A stretch of DNA of 7,803 nt, taken from the NCBI GenBank assembly GCA_000388065.2, contig KB932201.1; one strand, given 5' to 3'. The notes beneath the pieces are model-generated. The model made no database searches and was not told the origin of the DNA. It saw nothing but the letters and a program-made list of their open reading frames with translations. A program made the translations under genes and the position numbers. Source of the stretch: Fonticula alba ATCC 38817. Its lineage: Eukaryota > Protista > Nucleariida. Position 1 is the stretch's first letter. Each line of letters starts with the position of its first letter. This document shows positions 888 to 7,803 of this stretch, piece after piece.

Positions 888-923
<36 letters not shown>
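888..923 (+). repeat. (CA)18 microsatellite with degenerate CA/TA flanks
   Basis: Read directly from the sequence. Confidence 0.97.
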
Positions 924-2905: not shown

Positions 2906-3013
2906 NNNNNNNNNNNNNNNNNNNNNNNNNNNNNNNNNNNNNNNNNNNNNNNNNNNNNNNNNNNNNNNNNNNNNNNNNNNNNNNNNNNNNNNNNNNNNNN
3001 NNNNNNNNNNNNN
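2906..3013. other. Assembly gap (~108-109 N)
   Basis: N run whose right edge abuts a G run. Confidence 0.98.
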
Positions 3014-3605
3014 NGGGGGGATAGACAGGGCCCAGAGCTTCTACTGCTTGGAACGCGCGGCATTGAGGATGTGGCGTCGCAGAAGCGGCGCGCGGTTGGA
3101 ATTCGAGCCCTTGACCTGGAGATCTGCGTCCACATATTCTTTGAAGCCCAGGGGGGTGGGGCCAGGGGCGGGGCCGGGGGGCGGGGATTGGCAGGCGCAC
3201 CGGGGCTCTTGTAGGCCCGTCGGTGGTCTCAGCCATTTGAAGAAAAAAAGAGGCTCTTTGACTCGTCATCCCCCCCCCCCCCTCCACACTCCGCATTAGG
3301 CGGTAGGCGCGAGGAAGAAAAGGAGCCGGCATCGTGGGAGGTGGCGCTGCGCAGACAATTTGCCACGGCGGCACTCCCCGGCTGTTGCCCTCGTTCATCT
3401 TTCTTTTCCCGGAAGGGAGCACAAATTGGCGATCGCAGGCCACCGCCCGCCTCCACCGGGGCATACAACTGGGACGGTTGCAAGTCGAGTGGACACCGGC
3501 GAAACCCGTGCCTTCTGTATGCTCGAAAATGCGGGACCCCCCTCCCCCCTAGCGGCCGACATATGTTAATCTCGGCCTCTTGGGGAGGGTAGGCCCACTC
3601 TTCAT

Positions 3606-3632
3606 CCCCCCCCCCCCCCCCCCCCCCCCCCC
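3606..3632 (+). repeat. C27 homopolymer followed directly by GGGGAGGGGGGAGGGG
   Basis: Read directly; the length may be inexact in this assembly. Confidence 0.9.
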
Positions 3633-4068: not shown

Positions 4069-4406
4069 CCAACGGCCCACGGCCCAGGACAAACATGGCC
4101 CACGATTGAGCCCAACCCTGCCCTGTGGGCTAGCTGGGCATCGGGCCGAGGTTTGAACAGCCAGCAAACGGATGTCAAATATGAGGGCGTGATTTTGAAA
4201 TAGTCACACGGAAGAGGCATGGTCACGCGCGTCCGTTTCTTTTCAAACTCTCCCCCCAACACACACACACACACACGGTACTCGGAAGGGCTTCGTTCCC
4301 GGCCCGCCCGGTTGCCCGCACCCTTTTGCCGGCTGCCTCCCCAGTTGCCCTTCCTCCCCTGGGGCAGGAAGATCTTTTCCCACCGGATGGGATGGGTTTG
4401 GCGGGA
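4069..4406. promoter_or_regulatory. Putative cell-cycle promoter cluster: 3 CHR (TTTGAA), 3 Myb/MSA cores (AACGG), 1 E2F site
   Basis: TTTGAA at 4152-4157 and 4194-4199, TTCAAA at 4242-4247. CCAACGG at 4069-4075, AACGG at 4167-4171, CCGTT at 4233-4237. TTTGGCGGGA at 4397-4406. The cluster lies upstream of a mitotic-type gene. Function is inferred only. Confidence 0.45.
4259..4276 (+). repeat. (AC)9 microsatellite
   Basis: Read directly from the sequence. Confidence 0.95.
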
Positions 4407-4527
4407 CCGGCCAGGCAGATGGAGCATATCAACAAAGCATTCTACCGACACCGGCGGNNNNNNNNNNTTGGCGGGACCGGCCAGGCAGATGGAGCATATC
4501 AAAAAAACATTTCCCCGCCCCCGGGGG
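4398..4527. other. 10-N gap (4458-4467) flanked by a 60-bp false duplication (unmerged contig overlap)
   Basis: 4398-4432 is identical to 4468-4502 (35 nt). The next 25 nt align without gaps, and the mismatches in the second copy tend toward the neighbouring base. Confidence 0.8.
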
Positions 4528-4798
4528 GCACCCCCCCTTTCCCCCCCCCCCCCCCCCTCCTGTGGATGGGCCCCCGGCACGGTCGTGTGGCCGCCGCCGC
4601 CGCCGCCGCCAGAGCCGAAGCCGAAGCCCCGGAGAGCGACGGGCCTTTTCGGGCACATGCCACCGAGCCCGGGCTGTGATCAGACCCGCGGACAGTCACA
4701 GCCCCTCCTCCTTCAGCACTCTGCTCCGCACTTCGCTGCCTGCCCCCGGCGCTTGTATCTCCTCATTTACCTTCGCCCCGCCGATCTCCACCTGCGCG

Positions 4799-6458
4799 AT
4801 GACCGCCCCTCCTCCTTCGCCCCGGCGCCTGGAGTCCCCCTCGCGGCAGGGATTCTCGCTGACAAGCGCCAGCGGTGCTCCATCCCCGGCGAGCCAGCTT
4901 CGCCGGTCGGCCGCCAGCTCGCGCCCCCCAAGCGCCGGGCTTGGCTCCTCGGTGTCGGAGCTGCGCCATGGCGCGGCCCCGTCCAGCGGCGGGGGCGAGC
5001 CCGGGTCACCACGCGCCGCGAGCCCGAGCCGGCGCCCTCGCGATGACCCTGCCCCCTTGACGCCGTCGAAGCGCCTGCGCAGCGCCGCTGCTCCGCCATC
5101 CCCGGCCCCGGGGGCCACCCTGCCGGCGACCAGTAGGGTGGATCGCGCCGTGGCGGTGCTCATGAATGCGGCGAATTCCCCGGTGTCGTCCACTCGCCGG
5201 CGCCAACTGGCCCAACAGGCCTCGGCCCTTGAGGACTCGCTGTATTCGGACGCGGTGGACCCATCCGACCAGTCGGCCCCGCCGGTGGTGTTGATTACCC
5301 CGGCCAGCCCGCGCCAGGCGACCGAGCCGGCCATCCGCCACACCAATGATCCGCAATTCGGCACGGCCATCCCGCGTACACCCTCGCGCCTGCGAGCCAC
5401 GCCCACCGTGCGCAAGTCCCTCGAACCCGACGAGCGCCCCGCCCAGGGTATGGCCGCCACCGCCTTTTGTTTTCTGCCTCCCGGCCTTTCTTGCCCCCCC
5501 CCCCCCCCCCCCCACGCACTTCCCCCTTCCGCTTCTCGCGTTGCTGGCTGCATTTCCCTCCCCCACACGGTGCTGACCCCGGCGTCCTGTGCGTAGGCAC
5601 GGCCCCCGACACTCCGGCCTCCCAGCGCGCCCTTCGGCCGCGGCTGGCGCCGGGTCAGGTGGGCGGTCGCTTTGACTCGGCCCACCAGCAGCAATTCGAC
5701 CTGATGAAGTCCATCACCGAAAGCCCGTCGTCGGCGGCTCGTCGAACCCCGGCCGAGGCGGCGGCCTTTGTGCTGGCCAGCACGGCTCCCGGCCGATCGG
5801 CCCCATCCACCCCGGCGGACTCGCGTCCCCCGACGGCCACCCCGCAGTCGGCCGGTGCATCGACCGCCCGGCGCACCCCGGCGCCCCTGCCACAGAGCCC
5901 CTCATCGGTGGGTCCCCGTCGCGGGGGAGCCGGCACCGGATCGCCGGTCCTGGTGCCAGCGCGGCATCTCTTCCGCGGGGCGTTGGCCCCGGCCCCGGGC
6001 ACGGCTGCCAGCCCCGGTGCCTCGGCCGGCATGACCCGCGGCACCTCCAATGGCCTGGAAAACACACACGAAGAAGCCGCAGAAGCGGCGGCGGCGACCG
6101 AGCAGGAGGAGCAGGAGGAGGACGATGAGGAGGACTTCCATGACATCTCCGAGCCTGGCACTCCGGCTGTGCTTTTCCCTGTGAATGTCACGCAGGCGCC
6201 CTTCCGTGGCCCGGCCTCCTCGCCCATGTTGACCAATCGTGCCATGCAGGAGGCCCTGCGGGCGCAGCGCCAACAGCCAGCCAATCCCGCAGCCGGCACC
6301 CCTCCTCCCTCGGTGCCTGCCTCTGGCCGGACGCTGACCTTCGCCGCTATGGCCGGCGCCGAGGGCGGCCCAGCCCTGCATGAGCCGGCCACACAGGAGG
6401 CGGATGGCGCCTCCCTGGCGAGCGAACAGCCGCAGCAGCAGCAACAGCAGCAACAGCA

Positions 6459-6497
<39 letters not shown>

Positions 6498-7422
6498 GGC
6501 CCCCACGGCTGCCTCGCCGATGGTGGCTGATGGTCTGCGACCGGTGGCCCTCCGGCCGGCTGGCAAGCTGGTCGCCTGGATGCTGGGATCGCGGGGAGGT
6601 GCGCCATCCAGCCCGGCCCCGACCAGCCCGGCCCCCCCCAGCCCGGCCCCGATCGAGGCAAAGACCCCGCAGCCGCCAGCCGCCGAGTCACTTGAGGTGG
6701 CTAGCCCCCGGTCAGCCGCACGCCGGGCCCTGACCCCGGTGCAGCAGCAGCAAGTCCAGCAGCAGGTGAGCCTCAAGCAGGTCATGCAAGAGGAGCTCCT
6801 TTCGCAGTCGCTCCCATCGCAGCTGCCGGTCCCGACGCCTGAGTCCGGCCGGACGATCACCGCCGTCGGAGCCAGCCTCCAGCTGGGTCGAGCCCCCGGG
6901 TCGCGCTTTTCCCGGCTGCCCACGCGCGTGGTGGCCGCGGCCACCAGGGACGCCGCCGACAGGGCGGCCACCGCCGCCGGCCCTGGTGGCACGTCCGCCA
7001 CGCGGCCGGGCGCCGTGGCTGCGGCCTCGGCTGCCAGACCGAGCCTCACCGGCAGGCCCGGCGGGGCTGCCCGACCGAGCGCCAGCACTCGGCCGAGTGT
7101 CGGCGCCCGGCCGGCGCCGGGGCCCCCGGTGACTCGGTCGGCTACGGCCGCGGCCGCGGCCAGGACCACGCCCCCGGCCAGCCGGCTGTCCCAGCGTCCC
7201 GCCCGTGCTGCTACCTCTGCTTCGGCCGGCTCGGTCGCGCCGGGGCCGACAGGCGCCCGTGTGCCTACGGGGGGGGCCACTGCGCCGGCTGGCCGTCGCT
7301 CTGCCGTCCCGGCCCCCGCACCGGCCTCTGCGCCACGGAGTCGCGAGGAGGAACTTGCTGCCCGGCGGAAAGCCGCACGCGAGGCCGCCAATGCCTCCTT
7401 GCGGGCCGGGCGGCGGACCTGA
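4799..7422 (+). CDS. NUSAP1: Two-exon gene, join(4799..5447,5597..7422), 824 aa. NuSAP-like (nucleolar and spindle-associated protein family) disordered microtubule-associated protein; no SAP domain seen.
   Basis: ATG 4799-4801 follows a pyrimidine-rich leader. The exon 1 frame (ORF 4562..5596) joins the exon 2 frame (ORF 5467..7422) exactly through a phase-1 GT-AG intron (G|GC = Gly217), and the stop is TGA 7420-7422. Motifs: RFDSAHQQQFDLMKSI (F at 5671) has the same F/H/F/M/S/I spacing as the human NUSAP1 segment FKKLHEAHFKEMESI; RPVALRPAGKLVAW (6538-6579) resembles RPLNYEPHKGKLKPW; the C-terminus is a charged helix, SREEELAARRKAAREAANASLRAGRRT. Reference sequences are recalled, not searched. 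Gene structure confidence ~0.85, family assignment ~0.65, start codon less certain. Confidence 0.8.
5448..5596 (+). other. Spliceosomal intron, 149 nt, phase 1
   Basis: Donor CAGG|GTATGG at 5448, pyrimidine-rich body with a poly-C run, branch point GCTGAC at 5572-5577 (A 20 nt before the 3' end), acceptor GCGTAG|GC at 5596. Removal fuses two long ORFs in frame; if retained, the exon 1 frame stops at the acceptor TAG. Confidence 0.9.
6433..6495 (+). repeat. Coding CAG/CAA repeat encoding polyQ21
   Basis: 21 consecutive Gln codons in the exon 2 frame, with CAA interruptions in the 5' half. Confidence 0.95.
6608..6652 (+). repeat. Coding 15-nt tandem repeat x3, encoding SPAP(T/P)
   Basis: ccagcccggccccga / ccagcccggcccccc / ccagcccggccccga. 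Confidence 0.9.
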
Positions 7423-7803
7423 ACAGGGTGTCCCCTCCGGTCCCCCCGGTGCCCAGGCACCACGCTGGGCAAGAGCGCGTACAAGGGGTATTGTCGCGCG
7501 AGCGTCCTGCTTCACACATCCCATGAGTCGCCTTGGGCATCCCCCCCCCCCCAAAAAAAAAGCATACACACGCATCCCATACATCCATGCGCCGACATCC
7601 ATGCAAGCGGACGCCTTCCTTTCGAGCGGAGCCGAGGCCGGAGGGGGGAGGGGGCGCGCGGATCGGCCGACGGAGAGAGGGACGCAGGGCCGGGGGCCGG
7701 GTCGCCGGTGTTGGGTCGGACCAATATCATACTTCAGAATCAGGGATACCAGAACCGTCCGAATGCAGAACAGTGATCGGACCGCGGAGGGGGCCGGGGG
7801 GGG

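What the first reader, a model, noticed from the sequence alone, without database searches (positions are those of the whole stretch)
5662..5730. Hidden NuSAP signature FxxxHxxxFxxMxSI in an otherwise featureless protein
GGRFDSAHQQQFDLMKSITE (F242) matches the spacing of the most conserved NuSAP block, human FKKLHEAHFKEMESI. As I recall, the same pattern appears in budding-yeast She1 (FQAKHDSQFGQMESL) and in uncharacterised fungal proteins (approximately RFSDxHMAEFKKMDSI). Six positions match with no gap. The gene could link animal NuSAP to fungal She1-like spindle and dynein regulators, and it would probably be annotated only as hypothetical. All reference sequences are from memory.
Basis: partly seen in the sequence, partly recalled or inferred. 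Interest (0 to 1): 0.75.

Follow-up and report, generated by a model that had tools for sequence, protein, structure and literature searches.

The report
NuSAP/She1-type helix motif in Fonticula
A disordered, otherwise featureless protein of this fungus-related amoeba carries one short helix that is the hallmark of a large family of fungal proteins, and in those proteins the same helix matches the curated profiles of both animal NuSAP and yeast She1, two spindle proteins not linked in the literature I could search.

Summary
RFDSAHQQQFDLMKSI lies at window 5668-5715, in exon 2 of a two-exon gene of about 824 aa, and F242 is correct.

Direct tests from this protein failed. There was no Pfam hit and no homologue in three large protein searches.

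A back-translated motif pattern scanned over metagenomes found a real family. It includes Pezizomycotina proteins with RFSDVHMAEFKKMDSIANHPSAFR and Agaricomycete "SAP domain-containing" proteins with RFDKVHEEQFNKMDSIANHYAARR.

- One family member, searched against the whole own genome, hit only this locus (E=3e-4).
- A family HMM gives 28.5 bits here, against a best of 12.3 bits in a 31-Mb composition-matched random genome.
- hhalign probability is 91%.

In the basidiomycete members, the 35-aa motif alone hits both Pfam NUSAP (profile 26-48, up to 20.5 bits) and Pfam Msap1/SHE1 (profile 76-97). All these hits are below the curated cut-offs. These members also have an N-terminal SAP domain, as NuSAP does.

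The Fonticula protein shares only the motif, which is predicted to be one amphipathic helix. It has no SAP domain.

Verdict: this is a divergent, SAP-less member of a NuSAP/She1-type family. The function is inferred, not shown.

The parts
4799..5447 (+). Exon 1, from the first in-frame ATG to the last base before the GT donor. It encodes 216 codons plus 1 base. The product is S/P/A/R-rich and holds all 5 full CDK consensus sites ([ST]-P-x-[KR]).
   Evidence: Translation is open. GC3 is 0.82, above GC1 and GC2. No Pfam hit.
5448..5596 (+). Intron of 149 nt, GT..AG, phase 1, with a C-rich pyrimidine tract. The CTGAC branch-site match is at 5573-5577, with the branch A 20 nt before the AG.
Evidence: Read directly from the sequence.
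5597..7422 (+). Exon 2 with the TGA stop at 7420-7422. It encodes about 608 residues of low-complexity A/P/S/R/Q-rich protein.
   Evidence: Open frame. GC by codon position is 0.76/0.69/0.80, as expected for coding sequence.
5668..5715 (+). Core motif R241-I256, RFDSAHQQQFDLMKSI. F242, H246, F250, M253, S255 and I256 fall on the invariant columns of the fungal family.
   Evidence: The HMM alignment is and the hhalign alignment.
5635..5775 (+). The wider block that aligns to the fungal family, RPRLAPGQVGG-motif-TESPSSAARRTPAEAAAFVL.
   Evidence: Whole-genome reverse search with L010:754-981:- hit only window 5581-5775, E=3.2e-4, 45% identity. BLASTP gives 25/60 identities, E=2e-8. The family HMM aligns residues 13-59 of exon 2 at 28.1 bits.
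5662..5718 (+). Predicted single alpha-helix (residues 22-40 of the 80-aa piece) in an otherwise disordered stretch. F, H, F, M and I fall within 60-180 degrees on a helical wheel.
   Evidence: AlphaFold2 on alignment A4 predicts helix 22-40, with block pLDDT of 73-81 against 52-65 elsewhere.
5899..6198 (+). Acidic patch, protein residues 318-417, net charge -11.
6433..6495 (+). Poly-glutamine run, (CAG/CAA)21.
6799..7419 (+). Arg-rich basic C-terminal region, residues 618-824, net charge about +23. It is a candidate microtubule-binding tail by analogy only.
   Evidence: Charge profile. No sequence match to fungal C-termini.

Best explanation
The gene at 4799-7422 encodes a protein of about 824 residues. 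The protein is intrinsically disordered and net-basic, and it is rich in S/T-P sites.

Its only conserved element is a 16-residue amphipathic helix with short flanks. This helix is homologous to the signature block of a widespread fungal family. That family includes Pezizomycotina proteins, often misnamed 'erythromycin esterase', and Agaricomycete 'SAP domain-containing' proteins.

In the basidiomycete members of that family, the same block is recognised by the Pfam profiles of yeast She1 (Msap1) and animal NuSAP, although below their cut-offs.

I therefore read the Fonticula protein as a divergent, SAP-less member of an opisthokont NuSAP/She1-type family of spindle microtubule-associated proteins.

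Inferred mechanism, by analogy with She1 (Zhu et al. 2017, PMC5584168):
- The basic C-terminal tail binds and bundles microtubules electrostatically.
- The helix presents one hydrophobic face (F, H, F, M, I) to a conserved partner. In She1, the N-terminal region holding the conserved PISH motifs is needed for spindle stability, for Sli15/INCENP binding and for restraining Aurora B loading. It is not needed for microtubule binding.
- S/T-P phosphorylation would tune both activities through the cell cycle.

What is shown: the motif, its homology to the fungal family, and that family's sub-threshold matches to the two Pfam profiles. What is inferred: spindle localisation, microtubule binding and the identity of the partner.
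For: Homology of the motif to the fungal family:
- The metagenome pattern scan returned 120 loci. About 30 of them form one coherent family in long open frames.
- That family is invariant at F, H, F, M, S and I, including in members fetched by homology rather than by the pattern. In those members only the leading R varies.
- A reverse search of the whole own genome with L010 hit only this locus, at E=3.2e-4. BLASTP gives E=2e-8.
- The family HMM scores the motif 28.5 bits. That is above all 91 chance matches to the same pattern, whose best scores are 24.8 and then 19.9. It is 16 bits above the best score in a composition-matched random genome.
- hhalign of A3, which contains no Fonticula sequence, against the Fonticula piece gives probability 91% and E=1e-6.

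Link of the fungal family to She1 and NuSAP:
- Msap1 hits P0103 at E=4.6e-6 and 26.4 bits, against a cut-off of 27.
- Motif-only 35-mers hit NUSAP profile 25/26-48 and Msap1 profile 71/76-98.
- NUSAP was hit at this one site in 10 of 18 basidiomycete members scanned, and in 0 of 5 real ORFs that carry the pattern by chance.
- The SAP domain at residues 14-49 scores above its cut-off in P0021 and P0092.

The motif is predicted to be a helix. The C-terminal tail is basic.
Against: - There is no direct Pfam NUSAP or Msap1 hit for the Fonticula protein or for any piece of it at E<=10.
- No SAP domain is in or near the gene.
- Nothing outside the block of about 45 residues aligns to full-length basidiomycete or Pezizomycotina profiles.
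- The conserved Pezizomycotina C-terminal motif is absent.
- Three of four single-sequence reverse searches did not find the locus.
- All NUSAP and Msap1 hits in the relatives are below the gathering scores.
- Pezizomycotina members hit no Pfam family at all.
- The family was found with a pattern taken from this very motif. The invariant positions are therefore shared by construction, and only the flanks and the off-pattern positions are independent evidence.
- There is no expression evidence.
Confidence: 0.72

Rival explanations
1. Convergent short linear motif. The helix binds the same conserved partner in NuSAP, She1, the fungal family and this protein, but the proteins do not descend from one ancestor. 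Alternatively, only the fungal family and Fonticula do, and the NuSAP resemblance is convergence.
For: Similarity is confined to about 25-45 residues. Domain content differs: SAP is present in basidiomycetes and absent in Pezizomycotina and Fonticula. The NUSAP hits exceed what the bare pattern gives by only a few bits; L065, a spurious ORF, reached 13.2 bits.
Against: SAP plus motif in the same N-to-C order in basidiomycete proteins and in NuSAP is an independent coincidence (NuSAP architecture from PMC2172854). She1 and NuSAP are both spindle microtubule-associated proteins with C-terminal microtubule-binding regions (PMC5584168, PMC2172854). Similarity extends past the pattern, reaching NUSAP profile 9-63 in P0114 and L116.
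Confidence: 0.15
2. Chance match. A reader who remembers many motifs and scans a whole genome will sometimes meet a six-position coincidence in a low-complexity protein.
For: Chance pattern matches do occur in huge search spaces. L005, an off-frame match inside a bacterial gene, reached 24.8 bits. The Pfam profiles do not see the Fonticula motif.
Against: There is only one open-frame occurrence of the pattern in the genome. The score of 28.5 bits compares with a maximum of 12.3 in a random genome of the same size and composition. Off-pattern identities also match: RFD, QF, FD.M, APG upstream, and PS/AARR downstream. A relative of fungi is expected to carry an orthologue of a family found in both Ascomycota and Basidiomycota.
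Confidence: 0.07
3. The gene model is wrong. The true coding strand would be the 609-aa antisense ORF at 5655-7484, or the two exons would not be spliced, so that the motif is not part of a protein.
For: Neither protein database returned the window's own protein. Long antisense ORFs are common at 73% GC.
Against: Codon-position GC fits the + frame, with GC1 above GC2, and does not fit the antisense frame. The intron has canonical GT..AG ends and a branch site, and it restores the frame. The homology signal is in the + frame.
Confidence: 0.05

Closest known systems
Unnamed fungal family. It includes Pezizomycotina proteins named 'hypothetical', 'erythromycin esterase' or 'related to glucan 1,4-alpha-glucosidase' (for example Sclerotinia SS1G_07100, P0235), and Agaricomycete 'SAP domain-containing protein' (for example P0021 of Russula and P0111 of Postia).
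   Same: They share the signature helix R-F-x3-H-x3-F-x-K-M-D-S-I with its flanks. This is supported by E=3.2e-4 genome-wide, 28.5 bits with the family HMM and 91% hhalign probability. Like the Fonticula protein, they are long, disordered and S/T/P/K/R-rich, and the motif sits in the N-terminal half.
   Different: Fonticula has L and K where the family has a nearly invariant K and D (..F-D-L-M-K-S-I). It lacks the H three residues after the motif. It also lacks the KRKS/KRSPSK element, the Pezizomycotina C-terminal LSLSRLNMLARPKxRK and the basidiomycete SAP domain.
Budding-yeast She1 (Pfam PF17077 Msap1), a spindle and astral microtubule-associated protein that inhibits dynein and cross-links microtubules.
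   Same: The motif maps to Msap1 profile positions 76-97 through the basidiomycete relatives. Like She1, the Fonticula protein has no SAP domain and has a basic C-terminal region. She1's N-terminal conserved PISH1/2 motifs lie in the same part of the protein (PMC5584168).
   Different: There is no direct Msap1 hit for the Fonticula protein. It is 824 aa long against 338 aa for She1. Which PISH motif equals this helix could not be settled, because the figure with the alignment is not held.
Animal NuSAP / NUSAP1 (Pfam PF16006).
   Same: The motif maps to NUSAP profile positions 26-48 through the basidiomycete relatives. Both proteins are basic and largely disordered.
   Different: There is no direct NUSAP hit. 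The Fonticula protein has no SAP domain, no KEN box and no recognisable ChHD or microtubule-binding domain. NuSAP was described as vertebrate-only, with no clear invertebrate homologue (PMC2172854).

Membership tests
NuSAP (Pfam PF16006) | Match to the NUSAP profile at or above the gathering score of 26 bits | tested here: not met
   No hit at E<=10 for exon 1, exon 2, or the 100-, 50-, 35- and 30-aa pieces. The six-frame family search of the own genome found nothing, but its control was uninformative.
NuSAP (Pfam PF16006) | Conserved block F-x3-H-x3-F-x2-M-x-S-I (profile positions about 26-41) | tested here: met
   The pattern is present at 5671-5715. Its placement on the profile is shown by fungal motif-only pieces hitting profile 25/26-48. 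This is indirect for Fonticula itself.
NuSAP (Pfam PF16006) | N-terminal SAP domain | tested here: not met
   Exon 1 has no SAP hit. The four SAP matches in the genome are all on other contigs. PF18953 found none. An unassembled upstream exon beyond the gap at 4458-4467 cannot be excluded.
NuSAP (Pfam PF16006) | C-terminal microtubule-binding region, charged helical domain (ChHD) and KEN box | tested here: inconclusive
   The C-terminal 200 aa are strongly basic and end in a short charged stretch. There is no profile match and no KEN or D-box string.
NuSAP (Pfam PF16006) | Nucleolar localisation in interphase, spindle localisation in mitosis, microtubule bundling | not testable with these tools
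   Needs cell biology.
She1 (Pfam PF17077 Msap1) | Match to the Msap1 profile at or above 27 bits | tested here: not met
   No hit for any Fonticula piece. The best relative, P0103, reaches 26.4 bits.
She1 (Pfam PF17077 Msap1) | N-terminal conserved motif region (profile 76-97; the PISH region of PMC5584168) | tested here: inconclusive
   Motif-only pieces of P0103, P0062 and P0073 hit Msap1 71/76-98, and the Fonticula helix aligns to those pieces. No She1 sequence was available for a direct alignment.
She1 (Pfam PF17077 Msap1) | Dynein inhibition and microtubule cross-linking through the C-terminal domain | not testable with these tools
   Needs biochemistry.
Fungal RFxxxHxxxFxKMDSI family (no Pfam model in Pezizomycotina) | Signature helix with flanks, detectable by a family profile | tested here: met
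   28.5 bits with the HMM; hhalign probability 91%, E=1e-6; reverse genome search E=3.2e-4; random-genome maximum 12.3 bits.
Fungal RFxxxHxxxFxKMDSI family (no Pfam model in Pezizomycotina) | Nearly invariant K before M, D after M, H at +3, and a downstream K-R-[KS] element | tested here: not met
   Fonticula has L, K, S and ARRTP at these places.
Fungal RFxxxHxxxFxKMDSI family (no Pfam model in Pezizomycotina) | Collinear similarity outside the motif (N-terminal EMHP..HQST block, C-terminal LSRLNxLARPK) | tested here: not met
   Full-length profiles align only at the motif.

The most novel reading that the evidence does not exclude
Animal NuSAP, budding-yeast She1, the large unannotated Pezizomycotina family, the Agaricomycete SAP-domain proteins and this Fonticula protein would all be one ancient opisthokont family of spindle microtubule-associated proteins. 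The ancestral architecture would be SAP, then the helix, then a basic tail, with SAP lost in ascomycetes and in Fonticula.

If so, NuSAP is the metazoan She1 homologue that Zhu et al. [quoted passage not shown] The shared helix would be the docking site for a conserved partner, with Sli15/INCENP of the chromosomal passenger complex as the leading candidate.
Probability: 0.5. Interest if true: 0.75.

Novelty: new member of a known kind. Interest (0 to 1): 0.6.

Why it matters
She1 is the only known microtubule-associated protein that inhibits dynein. Its students state that a metazoan counterpart has not been found by sequence (PMC5584168). NuSAP was described as vertebrate-restricted (PMC2172854).

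A shared, invariant helix would make results from one protein testable in the other:
- The She1 N-terminal phenotypes could be tested in NuSAP. These are bent spindles, premature Aurora B loading and weakened Sli15 binding.
- NuSAP biology could be tested in yeast.

It would also give hundreds of fungal proteins a better name than 'erythromycin esterase'.

The Fonticula copy matters mainly as a phylogenetic anchor. It shows that the helix predates the split of Fungi from their nucleariid relatives, and that it can persist when everything else in the protein has diverged.

No paper in the searched library mentions any two of NuSAP, She1 and Nsk1 together. Curated orthology databases could not be consulted.

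Tried and rejected
1. Direct Pfam scans of both exons and of 30-116-aa pieces found nothing relevant.
2. The PF16006 family search of the own genome found nothing, and its control was uninformative.
3. The word-index protein search with residues 1-90 of exon 2 found nothing at E<=10, not even the protein itself.
4. The exhaustive HMMER search of 1.84 billion representatives with the 60-aa piece gave 0 hits at E<=0.001. A 16-residue motif cannot reach that threshold, so this says little.
5. The ESM Atlas was blank both for the Fonticula piece and for a basidiomycete piece.
6. PDB sequence searches returned only a chance Legionella Lem22 hit at E=0.49.
7. I tested a possible C-terminal resemblance between Fonticula (...ANASLRAGRRT) and the Pezizomycotina terminus (LSRLNMLARPKxRK). 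An HMM scored it about 0 bits, so I rejected it.
8. I looked for similarity of exon 1 or the rest of exon 2 to full-length family profiles. Only low-complexity noise appeared.
9. L065 (SFKQLHEASFSSMQSI) looked NuSAP-like but sits in a spurious ORF, so I dropped it. L005, the high-scoring negative, is an off-frame match inside a bacterial gene.
10. Reverse genome searches with L116, L066 and P0102 did not find the locus.
11. I could not fetch real NuSAP or She1 sequences. The word-index searches returned only Agaricomycetes and Pezizomycotina in their top 120. No paper text held the human peptide, and I did not type sequences from memory.
12. I had the idea that S. pombe Nsk1 might belong to the family. 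It comes from memory only and has no support from the literature search. It is untested.

Full report
**What is there**

The window is 70% or more G+C and has (GT)n microsatellites and two assembly gaps. An earlier agent's note says the genome (31.3 Mb, 214 contigs) is Fonticula alba. I did not test that.

On the + strand an open frame runs from the ATG at 4799 to a GT at 5448. A second frame opens behind an AG at 5595-5596 and runs to a TGA at 7420-7422. That stretch has GT..AG ends, a C-rich tract and a CTGAC branch site 20 nt before the AG.

GC by codon position fits the + frame and does not fit the 609-aa antisense ORF.

The product has about 824 residues. It is 19% A, 14% P, 11% S and 10% R. 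It has 33 S/T-P sites, an acidic patch, a 21-residue polyQ run and a strongly basic last 200 residues.

The spliced protein was never handed to a search tool. The only joined use was a composition count inside the script. The exact-sequence look-ups that need the joined protein were left out.

**The observation**

RFDSAHQQQFDLMKSI is at 5668-5715. The pattern F-x3-H-x3-F-x2-M-x-S-I, back-translated, has a single open-frame occurrence in the whole genome.

**Direct tests fail**

- hmmscan finds no NUSAP, Msap1 or SAP domain in either exon or in any short piece.
- A word-index search of 5.8 billion proteins, an exhaustive HMMER search of 1.84 billion representatives, the PDB and the ESM Atlas all return nothing.
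- None of these searches returned even the window's own protein.
- These blanks have little power for a 16-residue motif.

**The route that worked**

I scanned the metagenome contigs for the back-translated pattern R-F-x3-H-x3-F-x2-M-x-S-I. Of 120 loci, about 90 are chance hits, full of stops or off-frame. About 30 are one family in long open frames:

- an ascomycete type, GRKIAQPKGKVG-RFSDVHMAEFKKMDSI-ANHPSAFRAQP...LKRSPSKA;
- a basidiomycete type, RFDKVHEEQFNKMDSI-ANHYAARRG..KKRKSD.

Profile searches seeded with these loci gave:

- 227 hits for the basidiomycete-led alignment, the top 120 all Agaricomycetes;
- 957 hits for the ascomycete alignment, all named entries among the 120 listed being Pezizomycotina.

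The sources call them 'hypothetical', 'SAP domain-containing protein', 'erythromycin esterase' or 'related to glucan 1,4-alpha-glucosidase'.

In members retrieved by homology rather than by the pattern, F, H, F, K-M-D-S-I and the following H-Y-A-A-[KR]-R stay invariant. Only the leading R varies.

**Is the Fonticula motif a member?**

- A 76-aa piece of the metagenomic protein L010, searched against the whole own genome in six frames, hit one place only. That place is window 5581-5775, at E=3.2e-4 and 45% identity.
- BLASTP of the pair gives 25/60 identities and E=2e-8. The matches extend outside the pattern: T.P.T.A..R...APG.V..RFD..H..QFD.M.SI...AARR.
- Three other single queries did not find the locus, so the E-value should be read with a factor of four.
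- A family HMM built from 139 sequences scores the Fonticula piece 28.5 bits. That is above all 91 chance matches that carry the same pattern, whose top scores are 24.8, 19.9 and 19.2.
- The best score in a 31.3-Mb third-order-Markov random genome in six frames is 12.3 bits.
- hhalign of a 30-sequence fungal alignment against the Fonticula piece gives 91% probability and E=1e-6 over 32 columns.

A caveat applies. The family was fished with a pattern taken from this motif, so the pattern positions agree by construction. The independent evidence is the off-pattern identities, the flanks, and the fact that a coherent family exists at all.

Outside the block of about 45 residues nothing aligns.

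AlphaFold2 on the alignment predicts one helix exactly over the motif, with moderate confidence, in a disordered context. F, H, F, M and I fall on one face of that helix.

**Link to She1 and NuSAP**

- Full-length Agaricomycete members have a SAP domain at residues 14-49. It scores above its cut-off in P0021 and P0092.
- Pfam Msap1 (SHE1) hits P0103 at E=4.6e-6 and 26.4 bits, against a cut-off of 27. The hit covers 100 residues that include the motif. It also hits P0062 at 24.2 bits.
- Pfam NUSAP hits 10 of the 18 basidiomycete members scanned, always at the motif, at 13-18 bits.
- NUSAP hits none of five real ORFs that carry the pattern by chance.
- Most directly, 35-aa motif-only pieces hit both NUSAP (profile 25/26-48; up to 20.5 bits, E=4.7e-4) and Msap1 (profile 71/76-98; E=0.008-0.08).

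Both curated profiles therefore contain this block.

All these scores are below the gathering thresholds. Pezizomycotina members hit no Pfam family at all. I could not obtain real NuSAP or She1 sequences for a profile-profile test.

**Function, inferred**

Zhu et al. 2017 (PMC5584168) report the following for She1:

- The basic C-terminal 194-338 binds and cross-links microtubules.
- The N-terminal part, with the conserved PISH1/2 motifs, does not bind microtubules.
- That N-terminal part is needed for spindle stability, for normal Sli15/INCENP binding and for preventing premature Ipl1/Aurora B loading.

NuSAP was described as vertebrate-only, with an N-terminal SAP domain and a C-terminal microtubule-binding region (PMC2172854).

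By analogy, the Fonticula protein would bind microtubules through its Arg-rich tail and dock a partner through the helix.

**Novelty**

No paper in the library holds any two of NuSAP, She1 and Nsk1. Orthology databases could not be checked.

The Fonticula gene is best filed as a new, very divergent, SAP-less member of a known kind. The wider unification of NuSAP with She1 is the more interesting reading, at about even odds.

**Tools**

Noticed in passing
window 4152-4157, 4194-4199 (+) and 4242-4247 (-): Three TTTGAA hexamers (CHR-like) cluster 550-650 bp upstream of the ATG in a 70% GC context. The whole window has 6 TTYGAA against 2.2 expected; 9 of 200 shuffles reach 6.
   Followed up: partly
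window 2906-3014 and 4458-4467: Two runs of N. [quoted passage not shown] An unassembled upstream exon cannot be excluded.
   Followed up: no
P0144, P0152, P0153, P0233, P0235 and many others: Hundreds of Pezizomycotina members of the motif family are named 'Erythromycin esterase' or 'related to glucan 1,4-alpha-glucosidase' in UniRef/NCBI, although they have no Pfam domain at all. This looks like a propagated misannotation.
   Followed up: partly
L006, L053, L058, L079, L090 and P0124-P0235, C-termini: Pezizomycotina members end in a strongly conserved KKKG-LSLSRLNMLARPKxRK at the very C-terminus. Agaricomycete members instead have SAKKRARQSEYxRRRSR near the end. From memory only, the former resembles the C-terminal end of NuSAP's charged helical domain. 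This was not tested.
   Followed up: partly
window 5655-7484 (-): A 609-aa antisense ORF overlaps exon 2. Its codon-position GC (GC2 above GC1) argues that it is a by-product of high GC and not a gene.
   Followed up: partly
L005:6386-6433: An off-frame, stop-containing chance match (RFSVWH*KQFYKMESIAIH) inside a bacterial metallophosphoesterase-like gene scored 24.8 bits with the family HMM. This shows how far chance can reach in a search space of about 10^12 bases.
   Followed up: yes
window 888-923, 1602-1625, 2089-2102, 2274-2287, 4259-4276; C or G runs at 3606-3632, 4541-4557, 5494-5513: There are many (CA/GT)n microsatellites and long homopolymer C/G runs. One run of 20 C lies inside the intron.
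   Followed up: no
whole gene 4799-7422: Neither the 5.8-billion-protein word search nor the 1.84-billion-representative search returned the window's own protein. The gene may be unannotated or modelled differently in public proteomes.
   Followed up: no
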